Positions 3,071-28,420 of a stretch of 64,000 bases of DNA are shown piece after piece. Source of the stretch: Setoptus koraiensis (Eukaryota > Animalia > Arthropoda); NCBI GenBank assembly GCA_048013815.1, contig CM106586.1, forward strand, positions 16,182,001-16,246,000, written 5' to 3'. The notes under the pieces were generated by a model. That model had not been told where the DNA came from. It saw only the letters and a program-made list of their open reading frames with translations, and made no database searches. The first letter of the stretch is position 1. Every line of letters begins with the position of its first letter. The position numbers and the translations under genes were made by a program.

Positions 3071-4259
3071 TTAAAGGGATGGTTCATATTTCTCTCTAAA
3101 GTAATCCATGAAATTCTTCAAACATTTGACGTCATCCAGAGTTACTCCATGATAGATCGATGCCCTCAATCCACCTACCAGCCGATGACCTTTGAGTTCG
3201 TACAAGTGATGTTCCTCTGCTTCGGATAGAAACCTCTTCTCTAGTTCTACATTCTTTTCAGCTGTTTTAAATTTTGAGATGCGAAACACTACATTCATAC
3301 GGCTTCTCCACTCTTTTCCTTTTGTGGCCGGCCAACTATAAAATCCCTGCGAACCATCAATAGTTTTATAGAGGAGGTCAGCCTTTTCGCGACTCAATTT
3401 ATCCATGGCTGACAAACCTCCTTGCTTCTCTATCCACTTAAAACAAAGTCCGGCTAAGTAAATTCTGTAATTCAACAAAGAGAATCGATTAGTAAGATGA
3501 TTGGTGATGAAAACATTAGTCTAGTTTGGTCCGAGACAGACAAACTTACGGGTACACTGGTGGCGTATTGTAATTGGACCTATTTTTTTTCATCACATTC
3601 CAATCTTGCACGGAGGGACATACTTTCATGGCCTTACCGATAAGGTCATTTCTAGCAATCACTATGGCCAAACCGGCCATACCGAAGTTCTTTTGGGCCG
3701 AGGCCACGATAACCCCGTATTTGCTAACATCAACTGGCCGAGACAGAAAGTTGGACGTCATGTCGCAAACTAAAGGCACGGAATCTGTTGTTTGCGGAAT
3801 CGTATGGAACTCTATTCCCTGGATCGTTTCGTTGTCACAAAAATAACGATATTTTAGGGACTCAGGTGATGATTTATCTTCAGGTTTGACCAGCACGACT
3901 TGCATATACTTTTCGGCCTCTTTGGCCGCTTTTTCAGACCAATTGCCAGTAGTGATGTATCCAGCTTTATATTCATTCAATTGATCGCAAAGATTCATGG
4001 GAATGGATGCAAATTGTGTTTGCGCACCACCATGCATAAAAAGAACAGAGTAGTCATCGGGTATATTCATCAAAGATCTTAAATCTTTCTCTGCTGCAGT
4101 AAGAATCTTGTCGAAAGTTGACGATCGATGGGACAATTCCAAAACGCTTATACCTGTCCCTTTAAAATCTTTAAATTCATTGTATGCTTCATCAATTACT
4201 TCCTGAGGTATCTTAGCTGGACCAGCTGTGAAATATATTTTTTTTTCATTGGAAAACAT
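3071..4259 (-). CDS. PSAT1: Phosphoserine aminotransferase; 2 exons (4259-3550, 3464-3071)
   Basis: N-terminal FTAGPAKIP and ELSHRS, GGAQTQF, DMTSN, PLP-lysine motif SAQKNFG, YNTPP, GHRLVGGLRASIY. An 85-nt GT-AG intron (3549-3465) joins the two ORFs in frame. Confidence 0.97.
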
Positions 4260-4702
4260 GGCGCTTCGGTTGTATCTATCTTTATTACACAACGATTGAA
4301 TCTACGTAAATCAAGTTAATGTGATTGAATTTCCTATCTTTTTTAGTGTTAGTGTGAGTCTCGACATGAATGTCTAAATTCTGGTAAGCATTTCACCTTT
4401 TCAAACGATATATGTCCAGATGATAAGGGAATAATAAACAAACAATGAATACGGAAGAGTGATAAAATATTACTCACATGTTTGCCTTAGCGACAGCAAA
4501 CACAACAAAAACAAAGATAAAATAAAGTGGATTGGTAAGAGGTGATCACGTGAATAGTCTTTAATTGTAATCTGATCAGCGATAAGTTATAGACATACGT
4601 GTATGTTACGTATGAAATTTATTGTTGAAATATCAATATATTACATCGGGATAGATAATGCAACCGATACTGCTGTTGGCTTTTAATTTAGTCTTCGTTG
4701 TA

Positions 4703-5848
4703 TTAAGCTTGGACAAACATATTGTGAACGGTTTTCATGTGGATATGTGATTCGGTTTTACGAATTGGCAATCTACACTCTTTCAAAGGGCACAGAATAT
4801 ATAGTTTGTGTTTCTTTTTCATGTGCTCCATTAGGGAAGTTGCGTCATCGAATCTGAATGAACAAACATAGCAGAACTTTTGTTTCGACGCTATTCTTAT
4901 GGTTCCACTGCTTCTAGTTCTCCTGATAGTATTCTCGATGAGAGCCTTATGATGAGATCTTGTAGAGATGTGTTTACTACCCTCAAACATTTTCGTCTTA
5001 TTGATACAGGTTTTTTTGCTATCAGTCTGAACAATATGTTTGACTTTGTTTTCCTTAGTGTCGTGTTCATGGGTCATGGTATCATTAGAATTGATCTGCT
5101 TAGAATTGTCTTGATAGATGTCCATTTGCAAGATTTCTTTTTTAATTTGTTTGACATCCTGTTTAACCACTGGTACTGTAACTACGACGTTGTCTGTTCT
5201 CTTAGGAGTTGTCTTGTATATAGTTGTTGAGGCATTTGTTCTGGTGTGCGCGACTAAATTAAGTGGTTCATTGTGAGTAATGCGTGCCGGTGGACTTGGC
5301 GAAGGAGTGATTAGGCATGATGGGGTCACATTTAAGTCTAAATTTTGAGTGTCAGTTGAAGTAGTAGTTGTGATATTATTAGTGATTGCCTCGGGCTGGG
5401 TCTGGCTTGCCGCTCGAACACTAGAGGGGTCTATATTTTCTATTGTGATTCCAAGTTCAAAAGTTGAACATGTTCGAAAGAAGCTAGCCAGACAATCGAT
5501 GTCGACGTGGACTTGGCCATAGTATAAATACTCTAGTATTGCTATGACGTGGGAATGAGGAAATTGATCGAGATTGATGTGAATGTATTCTTCGACCTTT
5601 TTTGGATTCTTTTTCGGTTTATTCTTCTTGCGGCACAATTGAAAATGGATTTGTTCAGCGAGATAGAGACTGTATTGTAGCTTGCAACTGTGAGCGTACA
5701 TTTTATTGCCCTTGCACATAATAATAGTGTCGAATGGCTCTTGGTTGTTGCATATGAATTCAGTGAGTAATTTATCATCTATGGACAGATTTAGATTGCG
5801 GCAGCGCGAGTGAACGTACGATTGTGTTGAGCTGGGTATGAGCGACAT
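4703..5848 (-). CDS. BTB/POZ-domain protein with two C-terminal C2H2-type zinc fingers, intronless, divergent
   Basis: BTB-like FDTIIMCKGNKMYAHSCKL...ILEYLYYGQVHV, a Thr/Pro-rich linker, then CYVC-x12-HMKKKH and CPLKEC...HMKTVH. First ATG is at 5848; the ORF track starts at an upstream TTG. Confidence 0.75.
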   Translation of the reverse strand: MSLIPSSTQSYVHSRCRNLNLSIDDKLLTEFICNNQEPFDTIIMCKGNKMYAHSCKLQYSLYLAEQIHFQLCRKKNKPKKNPKKVEEYIHINLDQFPHSHVIAILEYLYYGQVHVDIDCLASFFRTCSTFELGITIENIDPSSVRAASQTQPEAITNNITTTTSTDTQNLDLNVTPSCLITPSPSPPARITHNEPLNLVAHTRTNASTTIYKTTPKRTDNVVVTVPVVKQDVKQIKKEILQMDIYQDNSKQINSNDTMTHEHDTKENKVKHIVQTDSKKTCINKTKMFEGSKHISTRSHHKALIENTIRRTRSSGTIRIASKQKFCYVCSFRFDDATSLMEHMKKKHKLYILCPLKECRLPIRKTESHIHMKTVHNMFVQA

Positions 5849-6075
5849 GGTGTGACGATGAATTTGATGATATTCAAATGAGGTGAACCTGTGAGAATAA
5901 TTGTCCTGGGTAGATGGTTCGAATGTGCGTGTTGGATTGAAATGTAAATGACAATTTGCGATTGGCAATTATGTTAAATTAGCTGACCGGCCGATGACGA
6001 GCGCGGACGAAATGAGCGGCAATTAGCGAGTGCAGCAGCTTTTATATCGATCGAATATCGTTGGTCGAATGAACC

Positions 6076-6652: not shown

Positions 6653-9600
6653 TTACAAAACCATTTTGTCATTTATGATCTTACAAATGTAAGCTACGTT
6701 GTTATCTATAAAACTCTCGTGATTTCCCTCCAGTATGTGCAGGTCCACCTTTCCGTTGATAACCTGGCGAAGGAATTTATATTATCATATAATTATATTA
6801 TTATATTATTATCGTTATTAACCTTAGCAAATTATACGCAGCACAGTAAGCGCACTTACCTTCGACAGAGAATAATCGTCCTCCGAAGATTTTTTCTCAT
6901 TTCCGTCATTTGCATCCAAATAATTCTGTCTAGCTCTAATTAGAGTGACATCGCCCATCAGGCAATGTTTTGTGCGGTAATTTGAGATGATCTCGTACCG
7001 GCGACAAAACGCTTCTACGGCATGCGCCAGGTCGACCTGTCTCGTTAGATCTGTTATATTCAGTAATTGTGTCAGTGTGTCGCATGCATATTTTAATTTA
7101 GCTTCCGTGTTGGACTCGATGGATATTAATTTTTCTCTAATGGACAAATGATCCACGTTGAGGTGCTTTGTATGATGCACTATGAACAGTAGAAGTATTT
7201 CATTAACTTTTTCGCTGAATGTAAGAGGCTTGTTGCGCGTTAGATTGGCCATGAATTGTGAGCCCAATTCAATCTGGCCTGGTGACCCGTCCAACAGTAT
7301 GAGACAACCCGGTGTTAGATTGACTTTAGATGCGTTATTCTGAATGAATGTTAGTATCTCGAACGCTATTGTCGCACCAAACGAATATCCGACAAGGTCA
7401 ACAATTCGCAGCCCGTTATCGGACTGTTGGGGACCGTTGTGCCAATTGAGTGTCTCTAGAATATCTACATAGGCCCTTGCTGCCTCGTGAGCGGTTGTCG
7501 TTTTGCCCAACTGTTTGGTCCAGTTGAGTCCTATACAGGGCCTGGCGATTTGCTCGCTGATTAATCTCATACGTTTAAATTCGCCGTGTATGGGTGGTAT
7601 GAAAAATATGGGCCTAGATTGAGTTGCCGACAAACAATGTTGGTTCAGATTGACAGAGTCGGCTTTTGGAAGCTGAAGTTGGGGCCTAAAGCCGGCGATA
7701 AAGTCCTTGTTTAATCTTGCTGTCGTTATCTGACTCAAATCAATTTTGGCCTGACTAGCGCCTTGCTGGCCACTTGCCGCATTACTATCGTCTGTACTGG
7801 CTGTACAAGTCTGGTTTGTGTTTTGTTTTGCCTGGACATGTCCGCCCTCGCCAATTTCTCTTATTTTTGCAATTGTCAAAGCTCTTATCTCTTGTACATT
7901 GAGCGTCAGCTCATATTCACGCTCAATGTATTGTCTGATCTCTACTGCCATGAGCGAGTCAAGACCGAGCTCGCCCAAATTGGCCTGTTCGCTCACCTTG
8001 CTGGCATCTTTGATACCGAGAACGTGCAATACGGCAGCCACTAGGTCTCCTTTGGCCGTCTCGTGGCCCCTCTGATCTATTTGCACAATGCTGGAGCAAA
8101 CGGCAAAAGGCGAACACAACAAATTGGCCAATGTGGCAAAACAAGAGGACATTCTTTGCGGAATAGTGCCACCAATGACAATGTCGTTGCCGCCCAGATT
8201 CTCATACGCAACACCAACGTCGCCAATGGCGCCCCATTGGATGGCCAGACCGTGTAAATTGTGTTTGCGTCTATTTTCGCATATGCGTTCCATAATTGAA
8301 TTGGCGTAGCCATAATTAGACTGGCCCGCGTTGCCCTTGCCGCACGACACAGAGGAAAAGGTGACAAAAAGCGACATGTCGGGCGCCTCTTGACGGCTAA
8401 TGTCGTCCAACAGTATGCAAGCGTCCGCTTTTGGTTGGCAAACAAGCTCAAAATGTTCACTTGTCATGTTCTCTAGCAGACTGTCCTTGAGCACCATGGC
8501 CAGGTGAAACAATCCGCCAATTTTGTTGACGGGCGACAATTGCTTGGCCAATTGGAATATCTTTTGCACGCCCTGGCGTGTCGTTCCGTCCGCCACTGTG
8601 CCATCGACAACAACATACTGACACGCCAAGTTGCGCCTCAGTCTCTCCAACACAACCCGCTGGTAGCCCGTAGTGAATCCCTTACGGGACGTGACAACCA
8701 GATACCTGGCGCCCATGGCAGCCAGCCACTTGATGAGCTCCAGACCGAAGCCGCCCAGGCCGCCCGTTATTATGTACGCCTTAGTGGGGTCCAGCATGAA
8801 TCTTGGTATGACCGGCATCAGCTGTTGCTGTGGCTGCGATTGGGCTGGAGGCCGCAACTGTTGCTCTGGCTCGATTTCTATCAGCACCTTGCCAATGTGC
8901 TTGCCGGTGGCCATATATCTGAACGCCTTCTCTAGTTCGTGCTTGGCGAACAGGGTATTTTTGATGGGCTTGATGTAGCCCTGTCGCATGCCATCCGTGA
9001 GGGTCGTCAGCACGCTGTTGAGTTGCTTGCTGAACGCGCCGGTCACCTTGTCCGTCTCGAACAACATATCTAACACTATTCCGTGGAACGACTTGTTGAC
9101 GTCCAATTTGAGCAATTCTAAACTGTTGTTCATGGCTAAATCGTATTTGCCTATCTCCAAGAAGCGTCCGTTTTCCGCGAGACATCTCACACTGGCTTGC
9201 AGCTTGTCGTCGGCCAACGAATTTAGCACCAGATCCACACCGCGCCCATTGGTGGCCCTCATAATGTGGCCCTCGAACGAGCAATCGCGCGAACTGAAAA
9301 TGTGATCAGGTTTCACAAATCCGTTGAATTCGTCCAACAAAAATTGACGCTTCTCATCGCTGCCCACAGTTGTGAACACCTCTAGCTTGTGGTGCATGGC
9401 CAGCCGGATTGCGGCCTGACCTACGCCGCCCGAGCCGGCGTGAATCAAAATCGACTCGCCAGATTGTATTTTTCCGCGATTTATCAGTGCCATTATGGCA
9501 GTGGCATACACAACAGGTATTGTGGCGGCCTCGCGCAAGCTCATCTCGTCGGGTATCTCAAACTTGATGGCACTCCTATCCGGACAGATGACTTGCGTTG

Positions 9601-12600
9601 CAATTCCGCGACCAAAAACCATGCCCGCCACACGCTTATTCTGGTGCAAATCAATACCGGCAAATTCCAGGCCCAACAAACAGTCGTTTAGAGCCAGTTT
9701 GGGCGGCAGAGCGTCCAGGGGCAAGCGGCCCGTGGCCAGCATGACGTCGCGAAAATTCAAGGCCGAATAGTGAACCTTGACAAGTTGTTTGCGTTCCGTT
9801 TCGCTCAAATAAGCAAACGGTGCCTCGTACCAACGGAAGCTCGACAAGTCGCCCCTAATGGACACGTTTGCGTAAGCTTGCGCCGATTCAATTCTGTGGT
9901 GCGATCTGTCAAATGTGGCGCCAGTTGCTTCCGTATCCGTTGGCGTTGCATTTTCAGCTGTATCGAAATAGTCTGTAAGTGTTATGTGGCGCCACGATCC
10001 CCAATTTCCGTTTGAGTTTATGCAATTCCAGATCATGTTCCTCTTGAGAGCTGTGGCAAAATTTTCGCTCATTCTGATGTCCTGCAAACTCACCTCGGAC
10101 TCGTGCCTCTCTCTGAATGTGTGCATGTCATAGAAGCAGCGCAAGTTTTTGCTGCCAAGCTCGCGCCTCAGACACTGAATCATACCCACAAGCCCGTTGA
10201 CGGGATTGTCCTTGGTGGCCACCGCGCACAGCCACACCGTTCTGTCCGCCTTCTTGTCCACCTTTTTCCCGGAAGTGGTTTCATGTGTTTCAATTGGGTT
10301 GTTTGACGACGCGTCGGCGCTGTCCAGCGGGGCCCCGCTCGCTTGTTCGCTGCTCGTGTCACCGCTCTCTGGCTTGAATTCGTTCTTCAGCTCGCGCAAC
10401 CAACTTGCGTAATCTTGGTGCCTGACGTGTATCATTTTGATGTTGTCACTCTCGTCTGGTTGTTGTGGTTGCTGCTGTTGTTGCTGTTGCTGGTTGCTCT
10501 TGTGAACTTGAAACAGGAACACTGTGCAACCGGTGGTGTCCTGTCGCTTGGAGATCAGTGTCATATTGCACCTTTTGGCCTCTGTCACCAGCAGTTTAAT
10601 ACGAGCATCGCATGCCAATTGAATCTGATGAACTTCCTCAATGATTGCGTCATCAAACGACGACTTGTGCGACGTCGAGTGTGGATATCCGGTGCTCGCC
10701 GCATCATCCGGCTTATATTGCCTGGTAGCCATGATGAATCTCTCTGCCATGCTCAAGCTGTGACGCATCATAGCTATCAGAAAGCCGCCTTGTCTTACTA
10801 TTTGTGTCAATGTGCTCAATATGGGCCCCAAACCATTGGACTCTATCAGCATCATCGGAGCGTAGCAGCTACTGTCAAAATAGCAAATTGCGTCTAGCAG
10901 TCGATCTTCTTGCACTAGACTCAGCAGTGAGCATTTTGTATCGCTAGCGACATCTTTCAATGTGTGCGTTTTAACATCGCTCTGAAGCTGCAATTCTTTC
11001 GGATTTGGATGGGCCAATGTGAAGTCAAGCGCTACGTTTGGGGCCACCTCTTGAACGAGCTTCTTCAAATAACTATGCTGAATGTTTTGTCCGACGTTTA
11101 TCTCCATCAGGCGCAACTTGTTTGCCGAATGACAACTGTTCTCGATGATCATCTCAATGGTTGGCCGAATGAAACGTTCGCTAATGAGGCTCGATTTTAT
11201 AATGTCTGATCGGGCAAGTAAATTTTCATGCTCCTCACACGATGTCACAATGCTGGCGAGCAGCGCGTTCAGCCTGGTTTCTCTTCGCGTGTTGGTCGAC
11301 TTTGTCGCTACACTGCTCACATATGAGCTCCAAACGGAATCCAACAGAGATAGAAGTGCCCAGGGCTGGTTCTTCGCCAGTTCCTGCTTGACAAAATCCG
11401 CATCTATTGGCTGCGTTTTGCTTTTCTCATTCTCATTTTGTTGCTGCTGGCTGTTGCCGTCGCTACAATTATCCTGTTGGTTGGTGTTATCATTTTGCGA
11501 CTGAGATTGGTTCAATTGGCCCCGACGAATTTTCAGTTTTTCATTCATATACTGCTCTATTTGTTGTTTAGTTAACGGCCTGTATCCATTGACAAGATTC
11601 TTGAGCAATTTACTGTTGTTGGGCCCGCCGGCCTGTTTGCCATTTTGCCTTGCATGATCAATGAGCTTGATTAATTCATACACCACGTTGTTACAAATTC
11701 TGCAATAGTACTCCCTGGCTGCATTTCCGCTCAACTCAAAGTCCCTAACGGGCTCCTCGATATCGGGCATGAATTTGTAACTTTCCAACAGTGGCTTGTT
11801 CAATTCTCGTCTGGGCGCCGGGGTGGCTCTAATGCCGCGCATCTCTACACCGTCCGTAACAATTATGCCTGTCACCAAATCACAGAAAGTGTCAAATATG
11901 CACACTCTTTCCACTTCGTCATCGGCCTCTTTTTCATCCGATTTAGGGGCGATTTCTTTTTGAGTGTCCGAATCATCAGCTGATGAATTCATATGTCTGA
12001 GCATCATGTTCTTCATGGCCTCGCGCGCTTTGCCCGTGTCCAGTGTCTTGGACAATTTGTCCAACTTGACGCCGGCCCTGGTCAACTTTTCAAATATTTT
12101 ATCCGGATTGAAGCGCACATAATCGAAGCGAGTGGGCAAAAACAGTCCGCCCGTCGGAGCGTGTGTACAAATAGCCAAAAAGATTGATTGCAATATGTTG
12201 TCTGTCAGGGCCACCATTTCGCCATTGAATTTCACCTGTACGAAACGGCCGTCACTTGAGGCCGACTGAATACAACGGAACGTTTCGCCATAATCGTATC
12301 CATTGACTCTAAATGACTTATAAACATCGTCGTGACTCAGAGTTAACTTTAGATTTTCGCCACGTATTCTGTTCGCTATATCTTCATACAGCAAACCGTT
12401 TGGATTGACCTCTGGCGATTTTACACTGCCGTCCACCACAACACTGTCGCCCTCTTTAACCTCGAACTGGCCAGTGGTAACCTCGAGATTTATATACAAT
12501 CTTGTCAAGCTGCTGCCGCTGAGCATGACGGCCCGGTGTAGGCGAACATTGTGAAACTCAATGGGCACCAGTTTGTCTTCGGTGTTTTGGTAGCTGGCGT

Positions 12601-15600
12601 CGTAGATTTGTCTCTTTGTGAATGAGAACACCCTCCAAACATAAAACAAGTAGCCCGTGGCGGGAAACAGCACCCTACCCTCGACAGTGTGCCCGACGAG
12701 ATACTTGTCCCTCTCTTGCACCAATTCTATGGGTAGTTCCGATTTGGCCGACGATTTACCAAATTGGTCGGGATATTTTGGTACAAACATGGTATCTGAA
12801 TGGTCCCATTGTATGAGCGAGCTAAGCGAAGGCACTTGGCGCCGAACAGGAAACTGCACCGACGGATACAGGTCACTGTGCAACAGATCAACTGTGAGGC
12901 CAGCCTGGAATAGGCTGCCAATGCCAGAGAATAATGTTAAATTTGCATTTTGGGCATCGTCGCGTTTCATCAGCTTCACATAAGCCAGCTTGTCTGGGCC
13001 CATCAGCGATCGCAATATGGGCTCGAACAGTCCGTGAGGTCCGATCTCTATGACAATGGAATCTTCATCGATTGTTGCAACGGCCTGGCGAAATTCCACT
13101 CTCTCGCACAGATTGCTTGCGAAATATTCGGCATTTGCAATTATATTGTTCTGTTCTCGTGGGCCCGAAACGACACTCGATATCCATTTGCCGCTGCGGA
13201 GCTGACTGTAGTCTGTGCCCGCGAACAACAACTTGCGAACTGATTGCACCAACTTGTTCCTTATGTCGCTCCCCATTATGTGAGGATTATGGAGGCCGTA
13301 CTCAACATTGAGCCTCGTGAACTGGATGCCCGTGTTGCCCGGTTGCCGCTCAACAAATCCGACAAACTCGTCCACTTGTTGCCGTGTGCCCGATATGGTG
13401 GCCCATTGGGGCCCGTTGTCGCAGCCTATGTACAATGTTTTAGGCGATTGGGGTTGCTGCTCGTTGCTTGCATAGAATTTGTTGATCCAATTTTGAAGCT
13501 CCTCAGAGCCTCTGTTTATGGCGACCATTGAGCCGGCAATGGAGTCGCCATTGGCCAGCAGTGTGCTAGACAGGTAGTAGGCCAGAAGGATGGTCTCGCG
13601 TTCGTCAAGTATTCCGTCGGCATACGCGCACGCTATTTCGCCAAGAGAGTGTCCAATAATGGCCCCAGTTGGCACAATATTCAGGCTTGATTTTAACAGA
13701 TTTGTCAATGCTATTTGCATGGCGGTCACGCCAACAAACGTGTCCACTATGGAAAATTTGGTGTCTTTTTCGGTGAGCGTCTCTATCAGATCAAATTCAA
13801 ACGGTTCCAAAATGGCGTTGAGTCTCTCTATGGTGCACCAAAACGAGGGGCATTGCTGCAACTGCTTGCCCATACCATTCCAGGCGCAACCCAAGCCAGG
13901 GTACACGAAGTAACACGATTTCTGTTTGGCCTCTTGAAAATGGTGCTGGGGTCGGCCCAAATCGAGCGCTTTTTCGCCGCTGGCCTCAGGTGGTCGCATA
14001 TTGCACGCCTTCACCGACCTGTAGAGCTCCGTTTGAGTTGTCAGATCAACAATTAGGACGCCCCTGTAGCGCATGAGTCTGTCAATGGGGCCAGAGGAAA
14101 GCGAATCGACCAGCGCGAGAAAATCTCTCGTCAGCGTTCTACTTTTCATATCGTCGCTCAAAATGGAATTAAAGAAATGTTGAACTTTGTCCTCTGTTCG
14201 TCCGAACATACAAATCAGGCGCCACTGTTCCTCGAATCGGCAACAATCCGTTTCCTCGGCAACGGGCCTAACTACGTCTCTGGCGTTTGCACGGAATATT
14301 CCGTGCACATTGGCCCCACCGAAGCCGTAACAACTCATGGGTATTATCTTGGAGCGCAACGGTTTATTCTCTAGAACCACCTGTAAGCGGCCGTCCATAA
14401 GTGACTCAATGGTGGGATTTGGCTTCATAAAATGCAAACTCTTGTATATGATCTCGTTCTCTAGCATCAATATTACCTTGGCCAGCGAGCACAGTCCCGA
14501 CGCTCCCTCCGAGTGGCCCATGTTTGTTTTGATGCTGCCCACCATGAGGGGCCCCACGGTGCGCTCATTGCGTTCGTCTGCGGGATAATAGACCTCTGAG
14601 ATGGCCTTGGCCTCTTGCGGGTCGCCCGCGGGCGTTCCAGTTCCGTGCGCCTCTAGATATTCGACGTGATTTGTGTGCAAATTGGCCTGTTCTTTGCACA
14701 CTCTTATCAGGTGTTCTTGCGAGCTGGCCGACGGAAACGTGATGCCTTCCTTCTTGAAGCCGTCAACGTTACATTGGCTATTTATGATGGAGGTGTAATT
14801 ACGCAGCGCCAACGGTTTTCGTTGCAGCAACACCGACACGCATGCCTCGCTTTTGACGTAACCGTCGGCTCGTGAATCGAGAAAACGCGAATATCCGCTT
14901 GTGGATAACATTTGCATCTGTAGGAATATAAACGAGTTTATTGGATGTATTGATATGTTAGTTCCGCACACAATGGCCTGATCAACGAGGCCCAGCTGAA
15001 TGCTAGCAACGGCATTGTGCAGCGCAACAAATGCCGAGGCGCAAGCCGCATCGTAGGTGCTGACGTGACCCCTGAAACCAAAATATTGAGCGGTCTTTAT
15101 GGCCAGTTGACTATAGTAGCCGCTGCCCTTGAATGCGATATCCTCTGCAACGGCATTCTCAAACTCGCTGGTGTGCAAGCCCAAAAAGAGGCCAGTTTTG
15201 GAGCCTCGCAACGATGCCGGATTGATACCTGAGAGATTATGAGAGAAGCGGGGAATCGTCTAGATTTAGTTCTTTTGTCTCGCTCGACTGCAGCTCGCTT
15301 GGGCACAGCGAGGCCCCATCAATGTTACTGTATGTTGTCGGATTACTGTCGTATGGCAACTCACCTGCGTCCACAATGGACTCGTAGATGACCTCGTAAA
15401 GGATTCGCAATTGGTGCTCAGTGAGATCGGCCGTTTCTTTGCTGTAGCCAAAGAATTCGTAATCGAAGCGCGAAATATCCTTTATGCGGCCAGCTCTGCG
15501 GGGCAGATCCCACAAGCCCAGCGGGTAGCGCTTGTCGTCTGGATCGGCCACCATATCGATGCCTTCATTTAGATTGTGCTGAAATTCATTCATGTTGTCT

Positions 15601-15845
15601 GAAGCGGGAAAGCGGCCCGCAATACCGGATACCACGACCCCACTGTCAGCAATATCCATCGGATCTGCTGCTACATGGCCACTGCCAATGATATTAGCAC
15701 GTGCCTCACTGGCCTCACTGGCAAGCTTGCTCGTGGCGCCTGAGTTGCTGCTGTCTTGTTGCTGCTGCTGGTCAGTTCTTTGTTGGTTGTGGCTGCTGTT
15801 TGTTGAGGCCTGATCGCACTGATTTTGCTGCTTGTTTGCTGACAT
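6653..15845 (-). CDS. FASN: Animal type I fatty acid synthase or FAS-like megasynthase (KS-MAT-DH-pseudoMT-ER-KR-ACP-TE); 3 exons (15845-15365, 15228-6860, 6763-6653)
   Basis: KS SGIAGRFP, DAAC, EAHGTGT, NMGHSEG; MAT GHSLGE; DH HTVEGRVLFPATGY; ER LIHAGSGGVGQAAI; KR GGLGGFG and GQSNYGYAN; ACP LGLDSLM; TE GYSFG, with the catalytic His (EGNHES) in the last exon. Introns 15364-15229 and 6859-6764 are canonical and restore frame. Orthology to canonical FASN is unproven. Confidence 0.96.
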
Positions 15846-19533: not shown

Positions 19534-21348
19534 ATGATCTTTCGTTTGCATTATTTTCTATTCAATGCGGGCCTCAGCGCGATAACAATCATGCTGTCAG
19601 TGTTCCTCAAGCGTTACAGTGATGCCTCGCCGGCGGAAATAGGCACCCTACTGATGGTGTTGCCTTTCTTGTCTGTCATAACTAAGCCAGTTTTTTGTGC
19701 TCTGGCCGACAGACGTAGAGCTCATTTAGCTTTCCTGGTGGCCGGCTTAATTATATTGCTCTTGGGTTACGGTTCATTTATCATAATACCGTTCTTTCCG
19801 AAATTTGTCGAGCAACAAGGCCGAGCATGCTGGTATATATTGGTGATATTAACAATAATAGGCTACAATGCATTCGGTGTTATTTGGTCTCTTGGTGATG
19901 CAATGGTGGTTAATAAGTGCCATAGAACCAATCAAAAGTTTGGCATGTTCCGTTTGTGGGGAACGATATCTTGGGGTGTTTTCGGTTTTATTATTGGCCG
20001 AATAAATCAAGTGGACATGCTGCCAGATTATGTGCCGGCGTTCCTCGTCATGATAGTTGCTGTCCTCATTGAGATAGTGCTATTGTTGGTTTGGCCTTAC
20101 AAAGATGACTTCATCATGGGCGATTTACCCTCGTCACAAATGTCGTCCATTATTGAGAGTAACAATGAAAACAATTCAGAACCAGTTCCGGTGGCTCACC
20201 TGCCCAACAGCTTGAGCGGGTCGCTTAGATTGGAACACGAGGCTGTGGCGAGACTTGCCAATATGTTTGTCCAGGACATCAACAATACAATCTCTAGTCT
20301 CAAGTCTAATGCAAAAACGCGAACTAAATTGCCGATGGACTTAGAGAAATCGCCAACAAGCGGTTTCCAATATCCGAGCCAAACTCAAACGCAGGTACAA
20401 AATGCCGACGCACAATTGAACAAACAAATTCAAAAAGAAGCAGAGATCAATCAGACCAGTGCTAATTTCAATACAAATATAAGCATAGGTAGCAGGAAAA
20501 AGTATCCGCTGTATAGGACCTTGTCCACTGTCAATTACAAGCCGGAATGCTTGGATAAAAATGATTTGACGCCCAGCGATGATGGCGAATTGCCTATTGA
20601 GGACAAAGAGGATTTACAATTAGTGCTAATCAAGATGATAGTCAGTAGAGATGGAAAATTCTTGAAGTATTTCATAGTATTCATGGTCTTTGGCGCCTTG
20701 TTCAACATACACATGGCATTCTTCTTTTTACATTTAGAAGAACTGACATTAAAGGCGGGAATCTTCTCACAATTGTTGGGCTGGTGTACGGTGTCACAAT
20801 CTATCGCGGAGACTCTCTGCTTCATCATATCGCCTAAGATTGTTTCGGTAATGGGCCAAGACGGTGCTATCATATTTTGCCTCATCTTATTTGCGATACG
20901 ATTTTTCTTCAATGGACTATTCTACAGCGGATTGAATCCATACTTTTGTCTAATATTCGAACCAGGCCACGGAATCAGCTATGGTATCGCCTATTATATC
21001 GTCACAGACATCTCTCTGCATTTCACTCTACAGGTGGACCAGTTACTGCCTGAACTTATTGCGAGAAAACTTGTCGAGCCTGGCGTTGATGTCAATGGTG
21101 TAAAAAACGCTGTTCGCGCCACTATGCAAGGTATATTTAGTGGAGCTTTCGATGGCTTAGGGGCCGGTTTGGGGGCACTTCTCGCTGGCCTCATTCTCGA
21201 ACGAAAACATTACACCTATCTCTGGTGTCTCTGTGGGATACTGGCCACCGCAAGCGCCTGCATACAGCTTGCGCTAGCAATTGTGTCGCATTTCAAGAAA
21301 TCCGACAGAAATAAGACCAGTCAATCAGCTGGTCAACTATCTATCTAG
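19534..21348 (+). CDS. Major facilitator superfamily transporter, MFSD6-like, intronless, 604 aa
   Basis: Two bundles of hydrophobic helices around a long polar loop; KPVFCALADR, RLWGTISWG, HGISYG and FDGLGAGLGALLAG resemble the MFSD6/MFS_1_like family. Confidence 0.85.
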   Translation: MIFRLHYFLFNAGLSAITIMLSVFLKRYSDASPAEIGTLLMVLPFLSVITKPVFCALADRRRAHLAFLVAGLIILLLGYGSFIIIPFFPKFVEQQGRACWYILVILTIIGYNAFGVIWSLGDAMVVNKCHRTNQKFGMFRLWGTISWGVFGFIIGRINQVDMLPDYVPAFLVMIVAVLIEIVLLLVWPYKDDFIMGDLPSSQMSSIIESNNENNSEPVPVAHLPNSLSGSLRLEHEAVARLANMFVQDINNTISSLKSNAKTRTKLPMDLEKSPTSGFQYPSQTQTQVQNADAQLNKQIQKEAEINQTSANFNTNISIGSRKKYPLYRTLSTVNYKPECLDKNDLTPSDDGELPIEDKEDLQLVLIKMIVSRDGKFLKYFIVFMVFGALFNIHMAFFFLHLEELTLKAGIFSQLLGWCTVSQSIAETLCFIISPKIVSVMGQDGAIIFCLILFAIRFFFNGLFYSGLNPYFCLIFEPGHGISYGIAYYIVTDISLHFTLQVDQLLPELIARKLVEPGVDVNGVKNAVRATMQGIFSGAFDGLGAGLGALLAGLILERKHYTYLWCLCGILATASACIQLALAIVSHFKKSDRNKTSQSAGQLSI

Positions 21349-21666
21349 AAAGTGTAATATATAGTATAAGAAAGAATGCAAGGTATTGATGTAAGTGGCA
21401 CCAATAAGAGACTTGTAGGAAGAACGAATAAAAAAGTTTTCATTCGAAAGAATTCGTTCGAAGCGAGCGATCGCTCCGCAACACTAATACTCCAAATCTT
21501 TTCGAAAATCCCGCCTCGTTGTACGCAAACAAATGTCACATGCCTTGCGACTCGCAAGTTGCGAGCATTGCCCAGGCATTGATTTATTTATTATTATTAT
21601 TATTTGTTTATTTGTAAGATATATAAGAGATATCTCGGAAGATCGGAAAAACTAATCATTTGAGTC

Positions 21667-24600
21667 ATGTGGCGTAATCTTATGAAAGCCCCAAAGAGGA
21701 AGCTCTCCACGGAGGCGAAGAATGTGGCTCCACTTCAAGTAGGTGATATCATTCATGGTTATAAAGTAGAGAGGATCGACCATATCAAAGAACTCAACAT
21801 TAAACCCTACTTTCTTAGTCACTTGACGACAGGAGCCGAACATTTACATGTACAGCATGATAGTGATAGCAATAATGTATTCGCAGTATCTTTGCGAACC
21901 ACACCACAAAACTCAACCGGGGTTGCTCACATTCTAGAGCATTTGGCCCTATGTGGCTCAAAAAAATATGCCGTCCGCGATCCTTTCTTCAAAATGCTTA
22001 CAAGATCATTGGCAACATTCATGAATGCAATGACTGGCCCAGATTACACCGTTTATCCCTTCTCCACTCAAAATTGGCATGATTATGACAACCTGCTCAG
22101 CGTATATTTGGACAGCGTTTTCTTCCCACGATTGCGGCCGGTTGATTTTCGTCAAGAGGGTTGGCGTTTAGAATACGAACAACCAAATAAAGAAGATACA
22201 CCCATTGTTATCAAAGGAGTTGTTTACAACGAAATGAAAGGTTACTTCTCGAGTTCGGCGGCCATATATAGTCGCCGACTGCTAAACTCTTTATATCCTG
22301 ACAACACTTATCAATACGAGAGTGGTGGCGATCCTCAGGATATACCGAATCTGACACACGCAGAATTGAAAAAATTTCATCAGACCTACTATCACCCGAC
22401 CAATGCAAAATTCTTTACCTATGGTGACATACCTCTGGAAAAACATCTAAGCAAGATTAACGAATCAATAATGACAAAGTTCACTCACAATTCGTATTCT
22501 AAAGAGCAAAGTGAAATTCAGGAGCAGCAACCCTGGAAAACTTCCAGAGTAACCAATATTAGTTGCCCACCAGACCCCTTGAGCGCTGATCCCACTAGGC
22601 AGACCACCACTTCAATATCCTACATGTTGGGTGATATCAGGAATATGGAAGAAACATTTCTTCTTAGCGTGTTATCCTCACTTCTCATGGACGGACCTAA
22701 TTCTCCATTCTATCAAAGTTTAATTGAGTCAGGATTAGGCTCCGATTACAGTCCTTCGTCTGGTTTCGCTAATTATACTAAACAGCCTTATTTTTCTATT
22801 GGTCTCCAAGGTCTGTCCCATAGCGATGTCGAAAAGGTGCAAAACATAATTCAACAAACATTCGAGAAGGCATCTAAAGATGGATTCCCCGATGAGCGCA
22901 TTGAAGCAATACTGCATAGTATAGAACTAAGTACAAAACACATAAGCGGTAATTTCGGACTAAGAATTGCAATGTCTATCAATTCAGTGTGGAATCACGA
23001 CGGAGATGTAATCGACTCGCTTAAAGTCAATGAACAAGTCGAAATATTCAAGAACAAACTACGCATTGATAAACGTTACCTAAACAAAGCGATAGAAAAG
23101 TATTTTCTCTCAAATCCACACAAACTAACTCTCAATATGAGTCCTGAGGAAAAGTACCAAGAGAAACGTGCCAACAAAGAAAAGATGATGCTCGATGAAA
23201 AGATTTCTAAACTCAAAGATATTGATAGAAAAACTATCCTCTATGAAGGTATGGAGTTGGTCAAAATACAAAGTTCCAAGGAGGATACTTCAGTATTACC
23301 TTGCTTAAGCGTTTCCACTGATATACCCCGCCAACTTAAATATAAAACAAATCTCATGTTCGATACACACAAAGGCGTCAACATACAATTGTGTGAGCAA
23401 CCTACCAACGAAGTAGTGTATTTCAGGACATCTGCCGAAGTGGGCTCCAAATTAGATGATCAATTGATAGATTACCTGCCTTTATTTTGTGACGTGGTAA
23501 CAAAACTGGGCGCCGGAAATCTAGACCGTAAGAAATTCTCTCAGAAGATTCAGCTGACTACAGGGGGATTGGGTGCCTCATTCATGCTGAACCCTAGCTT
23601 ACACGAATTAGATAAATTTCAGCAGGATATACTACTTTCGTCTAGATGTCTGAAGCGAAATGTTCCTAAAATGTTTGAATTATGGGCTGACATATTCAAT
23701 GGAGTTCATTTTGAAGACAAGGACTACTTGCATCAACTCATCAAGGTTGCTGCATCTGAGTTAGCGGAGGGAGTTTCATTCAGTGGGAGGCAATATGCCA
23801 TGTTGCGCGCCTCATCGAAACTCTCAAGATTGACACGATTGCAAGAAAGACTCTCGGGCCTCTCACATGTCGCGAAATTGAAAGACATCGCCAGCAAGGA
23901 GCCGATAGATTCTGTGATTGAAAAATTGAAAGCAATATCAAGTATTGCTTTGAACCCATTCAGCCTCAAATGCTCACTCAACGCAGAACCTGAAGTCATC
24001 GATCAAGCTAGTCGAGAGCTGAGAAGTTTCCTAGATAAAATACAAAATACAAAAACACCTTCAAGCTCCCCGATCAAAAAATCAGAAAATAATTTTCATA
24101 TTGATGGAGATGATAGATCTCATGTGGGTTGGATGGTGCTGCCATTTAATACACATTTTGTGGGGAAGGCCCTCATGTCTGTACCAAAAATGCACAAGGA
24201 TTTCGCTAATCTGAGCATCCTTGCCAAATTAGTTTCTTCGAAATTTCTACTCAATGAAGTGCGTGAGAAAGGAGGTGCTTATGGCAGCGGAGCTCTCATG
24301 TCGACGACTGGCACGTTTCAGTATTTTAGTTATCGTGATCCACAACACATTAAAACCCTAGATACATTTAATAGATCTGTAAACTGGTTGTTGAAAGAAG
24401 AAAATTATACCGATCAAGATATAGATGAATCAAAGTTGGGTGTGTTCCAAGAGGTTGACAAACCAATAGATCCTGGATCTAGAGGCCTCTCTTTCTTTTT
24501 AACTGGAGAAAGTGACGACATGAGACAAGAGTTTAGAAATAATCTATTAGATGTGAAGAAAGCTGATATTGCAGCAATGGCCGCTAAATATCTTAAACAA

Positions 24601-24684
24601 GATAAGTTCGGTGCTTTCATATTAGGGCCTGAACCCATCAGTGAGATCTTCGAGAATGTCGAAAAAGTTGATATTGGGTTGTAA
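21667..24684 (+). CDS. PITRM1: Mitochondrial presequence protease (M16C), intronless, 1005 aa
   Basis: Inverted zinc motif HILEH (TGVAHILEHLALCGS), RDPFFKML, FMNAMT, GVVYNEMKG, REKGGAYG, YRDP; basic presequence-like N-terminus. Confidence 0.97.
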   Translation: MWRNLMKAPKRKLSTEAKNVAPLQVGDIIHGYKVERIDHIKELNIKPYFLSHLTTGAEHLHVQHDSDSNNVFAVSLRTTPQNSTGVAHILEHLALCGSKKYAVRDPFFKMLTRSLATFMNAMTGPDYTVYPFSTQNWHDYDNLLSVYLDSVFFPRLRPVDFRQEGWRLEYEQPNKEDTPIVIKGVVYNEMKGYFSSSAAIYSRRLLNSLYPDNTYQYESGGDPQDIPNLTHAELKKFHQTYYHPTNAKFFTYGDIPLEKHLSKINESIMTKFTHNSYSKEQSEIQEQQPWKTSRVTNISCPPDPLSADPTRQTTTSISYMLGDIRNMEETFLLSVLSSLLMDGPNSPFYQSLIESGLGSDYSPSSGFANYTKQPYFSIGLQGLSHSDVEKVQNIIQQTFEKASKDGFPDERIEAILHSIELSTKHISGNFGLRIAMSINSVWNHDGDVIDSLKVNEQVEIFKNKLRIDKRYLNKAIEKYFLSNPHKLTLNMSPEEKYQEKRANKEKMMLDEKISKLKDIDRKTILYEGMELVKIQSSKEDTSVLPCLSVSTDIPRQLKYKTNLMFDTHKGVNIQLCEQPTNEVVYFRTSAEVGSKLDDQLIDYLPLFCDVVTKLGAGNLDRKKFSQKIQLTTGGLGASFMLNPSLHELDKFQQDILLSSRCLKRNVPKMFELWADIFNGVHFEDKDYLHQLIKVAASELAEGVSFSGRQYAMLRASSKLSRLTRLQERLSGLSHVAKLKDIASKEPIDSVIEKLKAISSIALNPFSLKCSLNAEPEVIDQASRELRSFLDKIQNTKTPSSSPIKKSENNFHIDGDDRSHVGWMVLPFNTHFVGKALMSVPKMHKDFANLSILAKLVSSKFLLNEVREKGGAYGSGALMSTTGTFQYFSYRDPQHIKTLDTFNRSVNWLLKEENYTDQDIDESKLGVFQEVDKPIDPGSRGLSFFLTGESDDMRQEFRNNLLDVKKADIAAMAAKYLKQDKFGAFILGPEPISEIFENVEKVDIGL

Positions 24685-25048
24685 TATTCTCAATCCGCAA
24701 CCAATTACAATCATTAGACGCAACTCGTTGCAGGTATAATGACAATTATTATAGTCCCAAGTTAAATTTAAAAGTTGAATGTAATCTGTATGAATGAATA
24801 AAACTGCCAGCTCTACCACACATCAGCCTCTCGCGGATTTTCTACTGAACTAGTACTATTATATAATAACATCTGATTTGTAATATCCCGCTAGATCGTA
24901 AACAGCCTAACGATCAGACCACATGATAGTCGTCTGTATCATGCCTATTTGCAGACATTCGTTCAGATATATTATTTAGGACAAAATTTACCGACCTTAT
25001 TGGAGATCCCAGAATCATTTTTTTTCTGGCTATTAATTTGTTTTCTAG

Positions 25049-27477: not shown

Positions 27478-27486
27478 GTTTCGAAA

Positions 27487-27711
27487 TTACTCAAAACCGA
27501 ATATTTTGTAGATAGCCAACATTACACAACTTGCTGCCACATATCCGCTCAGCCTTTCGCCGATTCTAGCGGCCTTCCAGGGGATCCCACGTAGTCCTGT
27601 CTGGTGACGATCTAAAAGAGCAGGCCAGTAATAACGGATGTGTGTACATGTACATATAAACAGGACTATGACCACAAGTAGGCTGTTGAAATTGCAGAAT
27701 GCTGAGAACAT
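27487..27711 (-). CDS. TMEM167A: Protein kish (TMEM167 family), 74 aa, intronless
   Basis: MFSAFCNFNSLLVVIVLFICTCTHIR...LLDRHQTGLRGIPWKAARIGERLSGYVAASCVMLA matches the kish pattern FNFQSLL..ICTC.Y.R...LLD..K.G..G.FWK.ARIGER.S.YV. ATG at 27711. Confidence 0.92.
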   Translation of the reverse strand: MFSAFCNFNSLLVVIVLFICTCTHIRYYWPALLDRHQTGLRGIPWKAARIGERLSGYVAASCVMLAIYKIFGFE

Positions 27712-27845
27712 GTCGAGCCTAGTTGAGAAAATATTAATATTAAATTTATTAATAATGGAATGAACTGATGCTTCTAGATAAATTCTAATGTCAGTCACAT
27801 TTGTATGTGATTTTTATTTATACACATGGGAGTGCTCGAACATGA

Positions 27846-27858
27846 GCGCCAAATTCGA
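27846..27858 (-). promoter_or_regulatory. Putative E2F/DREAM-like composite element (tcgaatttggcgc)
   Basis: E2F-type TTTGGCGC fused to a TTYGAA-like half, about 135 bp upstream of the kish ATG; a similar element lies at 29681-29693. Confidence 0.35.
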
Positions 27859-27880
27859 GACGCGATCCTTATTTTCTATA

Positions 27881-28225: not shown

Positions 28226-28313
28226 TTGTTATAAAGGGTGGTCGCAAAAACCTTTACTTTTGAACTGAAAAGTCTTCGCTAGCGCTTCCACATTGTAACA
28301 TGTGGACAAAGAA

Positions 28314-28348: not shown

Positions 28349-28420
28349 GTCGAACAGGGAAGAAATGCCAATTTTGAGTTCGAAAAAATTTTAGAGTATT
28401 GTTGTTGTTTTTATTTATGA

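What the first reader, a model, noticed from the sequence alone, without database searches (positions are those of the whole stretch)
13280..13650. FAS acyltransferase lacks the malonyl-binding arginine and has a YxxH-type His motif
Seen: after GHSLGEIACAYADG the sequence reads ETILLAYYLSSTL, where animal FAS has EAVLAAYWRGQCI, so the invariant Arg is Leu (codon 13573-13571). The catalytic-His motif is VEYGLHNPH instead of (M/I)A(F/Y)HS, and the entry motif is PGLGCAW instead of SGMGTQW. Known: this Arg (R606 in rat FAS) anchors the malonyl carboxylate, acyl-loading PKS ATs often lack it, and (V)DYASH marks methylmalonyl-selective ATs. Inference: although every other catalytic motif is intact, this enzyme may not load malonyl-CoA normally and may use another extender or starter, or rely on loading in trans.
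Basis: partly seen in the sequence, partly recalled or inferred. Interest (0 to 1): 0.72.

Follow-up and report, generated by a model that had tools for sequence, protein, structure and literature searches.

The report
Mite fatty-acid synthase paralog without malonyl-binding arginine
This gall-mite gene is an intact extra copy of fatty acid synthase whose substrate-loading domain carries leucine in place of the arginine that normally grips malonyl-CoA; the change is shared by a whole mite-specific gene family that exists beside a normal synthase, so the gene probably makes specialised lipids by loading its substrates in an unusual way.

Summary
Codon 13573-13571 (minus strand) is CTG, Leu, at the position of R606 of mammalian FAS. 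The Ser-His dyad is kept (GHSLGE; His in YGLHNPH). The stretch is identical in contigs from at least two studies.

The gene is complete: three exons, 2986 codons, with KS-MAT-DH-ER-KR-ACP-TE all present.

The Leu is not private to this gene. All 42 members of a mite family (named members from Fragariocoptes and Aceria), plus one outlier, carry Leu, Met or Ile there. All 118 canonical animal FAS sequences I retrieved keep Arg, and one of them is a second, canonical FAS of the eriophyoid Aceria.

A careful tree places the family inside the acariform-mite FAS clade (100/99). It is therefore a mite-specific offshoot of FAS, not the housekeeping enzyme.

MAT is the most remodelled domain. The family has also lost H643, D647 and R773 (D647 and R773 contact the CoA adenine), and its KS motif DTACSSS has become DAACAS.

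The "YxxH / methylmalonyl" reading fails. The diagnostic third position is Leu, not Ser, and methylmalonyl-specific ATs keep the Arg.

Most likely the MAT prefers uncharged acyl primers, with malonyl loaded slowly or in trans. This is inferred, not shown.

The scan had already reported the same trait on another paralog of this genome.

The parts
15365..15845 (-). Exon 1: ATG at 15845, Gln/Asn-rich N-terminus, start of the ketosynthase. Ends in phase 1 before the donor GTGAGT (15364-15359).
   Evidence: Pfam ketoacyl-synt matches residues 69-170 of this ORF.
6860..15228 (-). Exon 2 (8369 nt): rest of KS, the linker, MAT, DH, the central non-catalytic region with poly-Q inserts, ER, KR, ACP and most of TE. 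The acceptor AG is at 15230-15229 and the donor GTAAGT at 6859-6854.
   Evidence: Open frame 6824-15211. Pfam domains. Splice sites read.
6653..6763 (-). Exon 3: the end of the thioesterase, including the catalytic-His motif EGNHES, and the stop codon TAA (6655-6653).
   Evidence: It continues '...DYSLSK' in phase 0 with 'VINGKVDLHILEGNHES...'.
12950..13909 (-). Malonyl/acetyl-transferase (MAT) domain: residues 435-754 of the exon-2 frame.
   Evidence: Pfam Acyl_transf_1, E = 5.7e-37. AlphaFold2 model pLDDT 88.4, pTM 0.89. Best folds are mammalian FAS MAT and EcPKS1/2, TM 0.75-0.79.
13571..13573 (-). Leu547 (CTG) at the position of R606, the arginine that holds the malonyl carboxylate.
   Evidence: It lies in model helix 118-134. 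The role of R606 is taken from PMC6954729.
13646..13648 (-). Ser522, the acyl-accepting nucleophile in GHSLGE; retained.
13289..13291 (-). His641, the catalytic His (H683 equivalent) in YGLHNPH; retained. It is followed by Asn (family-wide S684N).
13892..13894 (-). Leu440 in PGLGCAW, at the position of M499 (family-wide M to L).
13406..13420 (-). GCDNGPQW segment. Asp598 replaces canonical-invariant H643, and Gln602 replaces D647 (a CoA adenine contact).
   Evidence: The D647 contact is taken from PMC6954729.
13007..13009 (-). Ser735 at the position of R773, which stacks on the CoA adenine. The family mostly has Gln here.
   Evidence: PMC6954729.
15041..15043 (-). Ketosynthase active-site Cys57 within the family-specific motif DAACAS (canonical DTACSSS). 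The two KS His residues (EAHGTG, NMGHSE) are present.

Best explanation
What is shown. The window carries an intact three-exon gene of 2986 codons for a full-length animal-type fatty acid synthase. It belongs to a family that split off from the ordinary FAS within acariform mites and expanded in eriophyoid (gall and rust) mites. The family exists beside a canonical FAS. Its substrate-selecting half has been rebuilt, while KR, ACP, DH, ER and TE stay close to canonical. In MAT the Ser-His dyad is kept. The arginine that binds the carboxylate of malonyl-CoA is always Leu, Met or Ile, and M499 is Leu. Three canonical-invariant residues are also replaced: H643, D647 and R773, the last two being CoA adenine contacts.

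What is inferred. The MAT is an active transferase with a wholly hydrophobic acyl pocket. It probably favours uncharged acyl primers (acetyl or longer or branched acyl thioesters) and handles malonyl poorly. The ketosynthase is still of the decarboxylating Cys-His-His type and so still needs malonyl-ACP. That malonyl-ACP would come either from slow residual malonyl transfer at the same site or from loading in trans, for example by the canonical FAS. The enzyme would therefore make a specialised reduced lipid rather than bulk palmitate.
For: - Gene model and domains.
- R606 to Leu.
- The sequence is identical in independent contigs.
- 42 of 42 family members plus the outlier P0204 have Leu, Met or Ile, never a polar or charged residue. 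This restriction points to selection for a hydrophobic pocket, not drift.
- 118 of 118 canonical FAS hits have Arg, including Aceria tosichella P0253. That species also has the Arg-less P0153.
- Careful ML tree: family 100/100; family plus P0204 100/100; nested in the acariform FAS clade 100/99 and in the chelicerate clade 100/99.
- Share of canonical-invariant columns kept by the family, by domain: MAT 0.61, KS 0.78, DH 0.83, TE 0.84, ER 0.85, KR 0.93, ACP 0.97.
- Family signature: M499L, W605 to Y/H/R, R606 to L/M/I, H643 to I/V/D, D647 to E/Q, S684N, R773 to Q/S.
- This gene's MAT is as conserved as other clade-B MATs, with a MAT/KS identity ratio of 0.56.
- The Ser is kept in 41 of 42 family members; the His is invariant in a 42-row MAT alignment of 23 family rows, P0204 and 18 other FAS-type proteins.
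- The model has a confident MAT fold.
- Literature: R606 holds the extender carboxylate, and removing the guanidinium alters specificity (PMC6954729). ATs for dicarboxylic CoA esters share this Arg, while type-B loading ATs use non-carboxylated starters (PMC5655351). Insect FAS paralogs that lack MAT altogether can still be essential (PMC5039406), so help in trans is plausible in arthropods.
Against: - No biochemical data exist for any family member.
- No RNA evidence for this gene was found.
- In murine MAT, R606A lowered rather than raised octanoyl transfer (PMC6954729), so a primer preference does not follow automatically from losing the Arg.
- The KS still needs malonyl-ACP, and no trans-loading partner has been shown.
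- I could not inspect model coordinates, so a nearby Lys or Arg reaching into the pocket is not excluded.
- Clade-specific basic gains exist: K445, K648 and K736 in clade A; K511, R538 and K561 in clade B. This gene has only R538.
- The sister gene P0001 has lost the Ser nucleophile. That hints that MAT activity may be dispensable in this subfamily.
Confidence: 0.45

Rival explanations
1. The family's MAT still loads malonyl-CoA at a useful rate through a different binding mode, for example the family-wide Asn next to the catalytic His or lineage-specific Lys/Arg residues. These would then be ordinary malonyl-extending synthases with changed chain-length or primer choice.
For: The KS keeps Cys-His-His and so needs malonyl-ACP. 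S684N is conserved in 38 of 40 family members. Clade A gains K445, K648 and K736, and clade B gains R538, K561 and K511. Clade A has short branches, which suggests an important conserved function.
Against: No basic residue is gained family-wide. This gene and P0001 lack K561, K511 and the Lys at +2, and have Tyr at -1. Every other characterised malonyl or methylmalonyl AT keeps the Arg (PMC5655351, PMC12199272), as do 118 of 118 canonical FAS hits.
Confidence: 0.25
2. In this subfamily (this gene plus P0001) the MAT is vestigial. Both primer and extender are put on the ACP by another enzyme, as must happen in insect FAS paralogs that have lost MAT.
For: P0001 reads CHGLGE, with the Ser nucleophile lost, and has the most diverged MAT. 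This pair has no basic residue from -1 to +2 around the Leu. MAT-less insect FAS paralogs exist, and one is essential in Tribolium (PMC5039406).
Against: This gene keeps Ser, His and the glycine-rich entry loop. Its MAT identity to clade A (36.9%) is among the highest in clade B. It retains 39 of 64 canonical-invariant MAT columns. The AlphaFold2 model is confident.
Confidence: 0.17
3. One reading: the MAT selects methylmalonyl-CoA or another alpha-carboxylated extender, signalled by a YxxH motif.
For: A Tyr stands four residues before the catalytic His, as in YASH. The best PDB sequence matches include the methylmalonyl-using EcPKS1/2.
Against: The diagnostic Ser of YASH is Leu here. The Tyr is limited to this gene and P0001. 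Methylmalonyl ATs, EcPKS2 included (aligned 'afwra'), keep the Arg that is missing here.
Confidence: 0.04
4. Assembly or consensus error, or a decaying pseudogene.
For: No RNA evidence was found.
Against: The contigs are identical in at least two studies. The frame is open for 8.9 kb with GT-AG introns in the correct phase. The same substitution occurs in 42 relatives.
Confidence: 0.02

Closest known systems
Canonical metazoan type I fatty acid synthase (e.g. mouse and human FASN; Halotydeus destructor and Aceria tosichella FAS)
   Same: Same domain order and fold. KS Cys-His-His, the MAT Ser-His dyad, the DH HxxxGxxxxP motif, the ER and KR nucleotide motifs, ACP DSL, and TE GxSxG plus His are all present. 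The gene is phylogenetically nested in the acariform FAS clade.
   Different: R606 is Leu; M499 is Leu; H643, D647 and R773 are replaced; the KS motif is DAACAS instead of DTACSSS. The protein is about 500 residues longer because of low-complexity inserts. A canonical FAS coexists with the family in at least one eriophyoid, Aceria tosichella.
Animal FAS-like polyketide synthases (AFPKs; EcPKS1/2 of sacoglossans, arthropod ar-clades; PMC10764717, PMC11831141)
   Same: A FAS-derived paralog with the FAS domain architecture, a TE and a divergent KS, presumably serving specialised lipid chemistry. EcPKS2 and EcPKS1 are the top PDB sequence matches for the MAT, level with mouse FAS.
   Different: EcPKS1/2 keep the Arg. 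This family branches inside the mite FAS clade, not with mollusc-type AFPKs. The AFPK survey was based on KS domains and says nothing about the MAT arginine.
R606A/K mutants of mammalian FAS MAT
   Same: The same residue is removed. The published effect is altered substrate specificity (PMC6954729, citing Rangan & Smith).
   Different: Those are laboratory point mutants. Here the change is natural, is restricted to Leu, Met or Ile across a whole family, and comes with further pocket and CoA-site changes. The murine R606A mutant lost octanoyl transfer, so the outcome depends on context.
Type-B loading acyltransferases of modular PKSs (DEBS and avermectin loading ATs)
   Same: AT fold with the Ser-His dyad, acting on non-carboxylated acyl-CoA starters (PMC5655351). 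I recall that they lack the carboxylate-binding Arg, but I did not check this here.
   Different: Those sit in AT-ACP loading didomains of assembly lines. Here the AT is the only AT of an iterative synthase that still needs an extender.
Aberrant insect FAS paralogs lacking the MAT domain (PMC5039406)
   Same: Arthropod FAS duplicates in which substrate loading has been given up or changed, yet the gene stays functional.
   Different: Here MAT is retained with its catalytic dyad and re-specified rather than deleted.

Membership tests
Metazoan type I FAS | Domain order KS-MAT-DH-(central pseudo-domains)-ER-KR-ACP-TE on one polypeptide | tested here: met
   Pfam hits in this order. The TE His lies in exon 3.
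Metazoan type I FAS | Phylogenetic placement within the animal FAS clade | tested here: met
   Nested in the acariform-mite FAS clade 100/99 and the chelicerate clade 100/99.
Metazoan type I FAS | MAT with the Ser-His dyad plus the carboxylate-binding Arg (R606), giving dual malonyl/acetyl transfer | tested here: not met
   Ser and His are present, but Arg is replaced by Leu. Arg is present in 118 of 118 canonical sequences.
Metazoan type I FAS | Decarboxylating KS triad Cys-His-His | tested here: met
   AAC57AS, EAHGTG and NMGHSE are present.
Metazoan type I FAS | Product is palmitate made from acetyl- and malonyl-CoA | not testable with these tools
   Needs an enzyme assay.
Animal FAS-like PKS (AFPK, PMC10764717) | KS scoring between the FAS and PKS HMMs, and branching outside the common animal FAS clade | tested here: inconclusive
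   The authors' HMMs are not available. The KS is divergent (it keeps 47 of 60 canonical-invariant columns), but the gene branches within mite FAS.
Methylmalonyl-selective AT (YASH type) | YASH motif with a small Ser before the catalytic His, plus the conserved Arg | tested here: not met
   The motif is YGLH, with Leu at the Ser position. The Arg is absent.
Starter-unit (type-B loading) AT | Uses non-carboxylated acyl-CoA starters and, as I recall, has no carboxylate-binding Arg | tested here: inconclusive
   Leu stands at the Arg position here, which fits. Starter use by type-B loading ATs is stated in PMC5655351; that they lack the Arg was not verified, and no substrate assay exists for this protein.
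Starter-unit (type-B loading) AT | Part of a dedicated AT-ACP loading module | tested here: not met
   It is the single AT of an iterative FAS architecture.

The most novel reading that the evidence does not exclude
The family's MAT no longer works mainly on CoA esters. Having lost both the carboxylate-binding Arg and the CoA adenine contacts (D647, R773), it may take preformed acyl chains from another carrier, such as the ACP of the co-existing canonical FAS. That would make a two-synthase relay in which the paralog extends or finishes chains begun elsewhere.
Probability: 0.08. Interest if true: 0.8.

Novelty: new variant of a known kind. Interest (0 to 1): 0.55.

Why it matters
The malonyl-binding arginine was invariant in every canonical animal FAS I retrieved (118 of 118). 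It is also treated as a defining residue of extender-loading acyltransferases in fatty acid and polyketide synthases.

Here a family of at least 42 full-length, otherwise intact synthases always replaces it with a hydrophobic residue. That makes a natural experiment on how an iterative megasynthase can be re-specified at the loading step, and on whether such enzymes can be fed in trans.

The Arg is also gone from an aphid-relative paralog and a lacewing paralog, and is Lys in a beetle paralog. Loss of R606 may therefore be a recurrent route by which arthropod FAS duplicates take on new roles.

The result also gives a concrete biochemical handle on the almost unstudied lipid metabolism of eriophyoid mites, which are crop pests with very small genomes that nevertheless keep several 9-kb synthase genes.

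Tried and rejected
1. Insect or Drosophila FASN paralog (my first guess, from the poly-Q runs). Rejected: the nearest named relatives are the eriophyoid mites Fragariocoptes and Aceria, and the tree places the gene in Acariformes.

2. This family is the mites' only FAS, so that housekeeping synthesis would run without the Arg. Rejected: Aceria tosichella has a canonical Arg-bearing FAS, P0253, alongside Arg-less P0153. A tight cluster of similar unnamed 2.6-2.7 kaa proteins groups with P0253.

3. An ancient AFPK lineage shared with molluscs. Not supported by the tree.

4. A conserved compensating Lys or Arg. A scan of MAT columns found none gained family-wide, only clade-specific ones.

5. Residue-level inspection of the pocket. 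The AlphaFold2 model is confident, but the tools return no coordinates or per-residue structural alignment, so this was not possible.

6. RNA evidence. No RNA run holds the stretch.

7. Literature. I found no paper linking eriophyoids and FAS, and no mention of the arginine in the AFPK survey.

9. The big representative search was not used. It was unnecessary, and the operators had flagged it as costly.

10. All searches used exon 2 by reference.

It had already gone out inside alignment A1 to the search of solved structures in the same turn. It was left out of A2 afterwards. A local alignment file built earlier still contained it when the tree search was resumed.
Full report
**Observation**

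On the minus strand the window reads GHSLGEIACAYADGILDERETILLAYYLSSTL. The codon at 13573-13571 is CTG. phmmer against all PDB chains aligns the query's 'AYYL' to mouse FAS 'AYWR' and to EcPKS2 'AFWR', so the Leu occupies the position of R606. MAFFT alignments with 40 to 157 relatives put it in the same column.

- The catalytic Ser (GHSLGE, 13648-13646) is present.
- The catalytic His (YGLHNPH, 13291-13289) is present.
- The entry loop reads PGLGCAW where canonical FAS has SGMGSQW or SGMGTQW.
- Bases 12800-14100 are identical, with no substitutions or indels, in contigs of three public runs from at least two studies. A consensus error is therefore very unlikely, although some of these runs may be the assembly's own source.
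- No RNA run was found.

**Gene**

The finding lies in an 8.4-kb open frame (6824-15211). Reading the flanks gives a three-exon model:

| Part | Coordinates | Notes |
|---|---|---|
| Exon 1 | 15845-15365 | donor GTGAGT |
| Exon 2 | 15228-6860 | donor GTAAGT |
| Exon 3 | 6763-6653 | carries the thioesterase His motif EGNHES |

- The phases fit (…VDAG|INPASLRG…; …DYSLSK|VINGK…). The coding sequence is 2986 codons with the stop.
- Pfam finds KS, KS-C extension, Acyl_transf_1, DH, pseudo-KR, ER, KR, ACP and a weak TE, in the FAS order.
- The KS Cys and both His, DH HxxxGxxxxP and DxxxQ, the ER and KR glycine motifs, ACP DSL and TE GYSFG are all there.

**Relatives**

- A word search with the MAT region found nothing closer than 43% identity.
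- The top 17 hits are long (2.6-3.1 kaa) FAS-like proteins, mostly from Logan or ENA contigs. One is named: Fragariocoptes setiger, an eriophyoid mite.
- A KS-region search added more, including a second F. setiger protein and Aceria tosichella A0A6G1SKN2.
- Earlier notes of this scan call the genome a gall mite, which fits.
- All 42 family members, this gene included, have Leu, Met or Ile at the R606 column. So does the outlier P0204, from a metagenome contig. No member has a polar or charged residue there.

**Is it the mites' only FAS? No.**

- A search with the MAT of the canonical Halotydeus destructor FAS returned 118 canonical FAS proteins from mites, ticks, spiders, scorpions, Limulus, insects, molluscs, a nemertean, a hemichordate and a fish.
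- All 118 read Y-x-R-G at this site.
- Among them is Aceria tosichella A0A6G1SJY0 (P0253, 'AYWRGKC'), together with a tight group of unnamed 2.6-2.7 kaa proteins that cluster with it.
- At least one eriophyoid, Aceria tosichella, therefore has both a normal FAS and the Arg-less family.

**Phylogeny**

I built a careful IQ-TREE (LG+C20+F+G4 PMSF) of 58 KS-MAT sequences over 822 columns.

| Clade | Support |
|---|---|
| Arg-less family | 100/100 |
| Family plus P0204 | 100/100 |
| That group inside the acariform-mite FAS clade | 100/99 |
| Acariform clade inside chelicerates | 100/99 |
| Remaining canonical acariform FAS, excluding the family | 87/64 |
| Core canonical acariform clade, with eriophyoid canonical FAS nested next to Sarcoptiformes | 99/99 |

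- The family is therefore a mite-specific offshoot of FAS, either old within Acariformes or fast-evolving. It is not a mollusc-type AFPK lineage.
- Inside the family, clade A has short branches and includes Fragariocoptes and Aceria. Clade B is more divergent.
- This gene and P0001 are sisters (100/99) at the base of clade B.

**What changed**

I compared 20 canonical sequences with 20 family members. The table shows the share of canonical-invariant columns that the family keeps, by domain.

| Domain | Share kept |
|---|---|
| MAT | 0.61 |
| KS | 0.78 |
| DH | 0.83 |
| TE | 0.84 |
| ER | 0.85 |
| KR | 0.93 |
| ACP | 0.97 |

The two domains that choose substrates are the remodelled ones.

MAT signature changes shared by both clades:

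- M499 to L
- W605 to Y, H or R
- R606 to L, M or I
- H643 to I or V (Asp in this gene)
- D647 to E or Q (Gln in this gene)
- S684 to N
- A to G and L to F in the EIAPHxLL motif
- R773 to Q (Ser in this gene)

According to PMC6954729:

- R606 holds the extender's carboxylate.
- F553 is an animal-specific residue that loosens R606.
- D647 and T648 hydrogen-bond the CoA adenine.
- R773 and F671 stack on the adenine.

F553 is kept here. D647 and R773 are not.

In the KS, DTACSSS has become DAACAS in 19 of 20 family members and in this gene. The upstream ANR has become AIK, ATK or AVA. This agrees with a separate first-stage note on the same gene (s1-359811).

**The His motif**

- The family reads (F/I/V)ALHN or xxFHN. 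Only this gene (YGLHN) and P0001 (YAIHN) have a Tyr in the first position.
- The residue that is Ser in YASH and Phe in HAFH is Leu here. Canonical-type Chironomus proteins also read ALHS.
- The motif is therefore not YASH-like.
- Methylmalonyl ATs, and ATs for dicarboxylic CoA esters in general, share the Arg (PMC5655351). The SimG and LovB work attributes malonyl preference to the same Arg (PMC12199272).
- Losing the Arg argues against any alpha-carboxylated extender, not for a different one.

**Is the MAT alive?**

- This gene keeps Ser, His and 39 of 64 canonical-invariant MAT columns.
- Its MAT/KS identity ratio against other clade-B members (0.56) is typical. Its MAT identity to clade A (36.9%) is among the highest in clade B.
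- 54 of 355 MAT columns are at least 90% identical across 41 family sequences.
- The AlphaFold2 model built on a 41-row alignment is confident: pLDDT 88.4, pTM 0.89, with the Leu in helix 118-134.
- Its best structural matches are mammalian FAS MAT (2VZ8, 5MY0, 3HHD, 2JFK) and EcPKS1/2, at TM 0.75-0.79.
- In contrast, the sister P0001 reads CHGLGE, with the nucleophile lost, and has the most diverged MAT (ratio 0.44). Within this small subfamily, MAT activity can evidently be given up.

**Compensation**

- No column gains a basic residue in both clades.
- Clade A has its own gains: K445 right after the QW of the entry loop, K648 and K736.
- Clade B has R538, K561 ('GKM') and K511.
- Most members also have Lys or Arg two residues after the Leu, as canonical FAS does, and several have Arg or Lys one residue before it.
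- This gene has only R538. It has Tyr at -1 and Ser at +2.
- Whether any of these residues reaches the pocket cannot be judged without coordinates, which the tools do not return.

**Mechanism (inferred)**

- The strict restriction to Leu, Met or Ile, the retained dyad and the otherwise hydrophobic pocket residues point to an active transferase. The pocket residues are L440, F at 553, L at 610, and Y-G-L before the His. Such a pocket is tuned to uncharged acyl groups, by analogy with type-B loading ATs and R606 mutants.
- Context matters: murine R606A lost octanoyl transfer (PMC6954729).
- The KS is still a decarboxylating Cys-His-His enzyme, so malonyl-ACP must come from somewhere. It could come from residual slow transfer at the same site, or from another transferase acting in trans.
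- Help in trans is plausible in arthropods. Insect FAS paralogs have lost MAT altogether at least three times, and one such gene is essential in Tribolium (PMC5039406).
- With KR, DH and ER intact, the product should be a reduced chain.
- A canonical FAS is present in at least one eriophyoid (Aceria). Together with the family's size, this points to specialised lipids, for example cuticular or long-chain or branched compounds, rather than bulk palmitate.
- I put this at about 0.45. Rivals: normal malonyl loading by a new binding mode, 0.25; a vestigial MAT, 0.17; methylmalonyl selectivity, 0.04; error or pseudogene, 0.02.

**Comparison and novelty**

- By architecture and phylogeny this is a member of the animal FAS superfamily, but it fails one defining MAT feature, the Arg.
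- It resembles arthropod AFPKs in being a FAS-derived specialised paralog. That class was defined on KS scores that I could not reproduce, and the survey paper does not mention the MAT arginine.
- Arg loss also occurs independently in insect paralogs: Daktulosphaira has Leu, Chrysoperla has Cys, and Diabrotica and P0030 have Lys. It may be a recurrent route of neofunctionalisation.
- I found no publication describing it.
- Within this scan the same trait was already reported for another paralog of this genome (s1-325869). The present finding is therefore a second member of the same phenomenon, not a first discovery.
- Added here: a canonical FAS coexists with the family in at least one eriophyoid; the family's place in the tree; the loss of H643 and of the CoA-adenine contacts D647 and R773; the KS motif change; the Ser loss in the sister gene; and the rejection of the YASH reading.

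Noticed in passing
L001 (Logan SRR33593474), protein P0001 residues ~550-560: The sister gene of the window's FAS reads CHGLGE instead of GHSxGE, so the MAT nucleophile Ser is Gly. Its MAT is the most diverged in the family. It rests on a single contig, so an assembly error is not excluded.
   Followed up: partly
window 15029-15052 (-), around Cys codon 15041-15043: The KS active-site motif is DAACAS where canonical FAS and PKS have DTACSSS. This is shared by 19 of 20 family members. The upstream canonical 'ANR' is AIK here.
   Followed up: partly
window 13007-13009, 13406-13408, 13418-13420 (-): The canonical-invariant residues R773, D647 (both CoA adenine contacts) and H643 are Ser, Gln and Asp here, and are replaced throughout the family.
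   Followed up: partly
proteins P0020, P0034, P0027, P0030: Unrelated insect FAS-like paralogs also lack the Arg: grape phylloxera has Leu, the lacewing Chrysoperla has Cys together with GYSIGE, and Diabrotica and an unnamed protein have Lys. The loss looks recurrent in arthropod FAS duplicates.
   Followed up: no
L004/L005, protein P0204: A 2520-aa single-exon FAS from a metagenome scaffold has Ile at the Arg position. It is the sister of the whole eriophyoid family (100/100). Its organism is unknown; it could date the origin of the trait.
   Followed up: partly
window 9900-11900 (-) approx., central region of exon 2: Long low-complexity inserts (poly-Gln, Asn/Ser/Asp-rich) lie between DH and ER and before ER. 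They make the protein about 500 residues longer than canonical FAS.
   Followed up: no
window 41957-44149 (+): A 730-aa open frame with no Pfam match.
   Followed up: no
window 3546-4292 (-), 4703-5968 (-), 19534-29527, 61754-63976 (-): The neighbouring genes are mostly single large exons: an aminotransferase class-V fragment, a BTB protein, an MFS_1_like transporter, a PreP/M16C peptidase, NAA35, RagC/D and CAMSAP. The genome is compact and intron-poor. Nothing suggests a lipid gene cluster around the FAS.
   Followed up: partly
proteins P0032, P0025: A FAS labelled as a gammaproteobacterial MAG groups with an unnamed animal-like FAS inside the animal tree. It probably reflects eukaryotic contamination of the bin or a transfer.
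   Followed up: no
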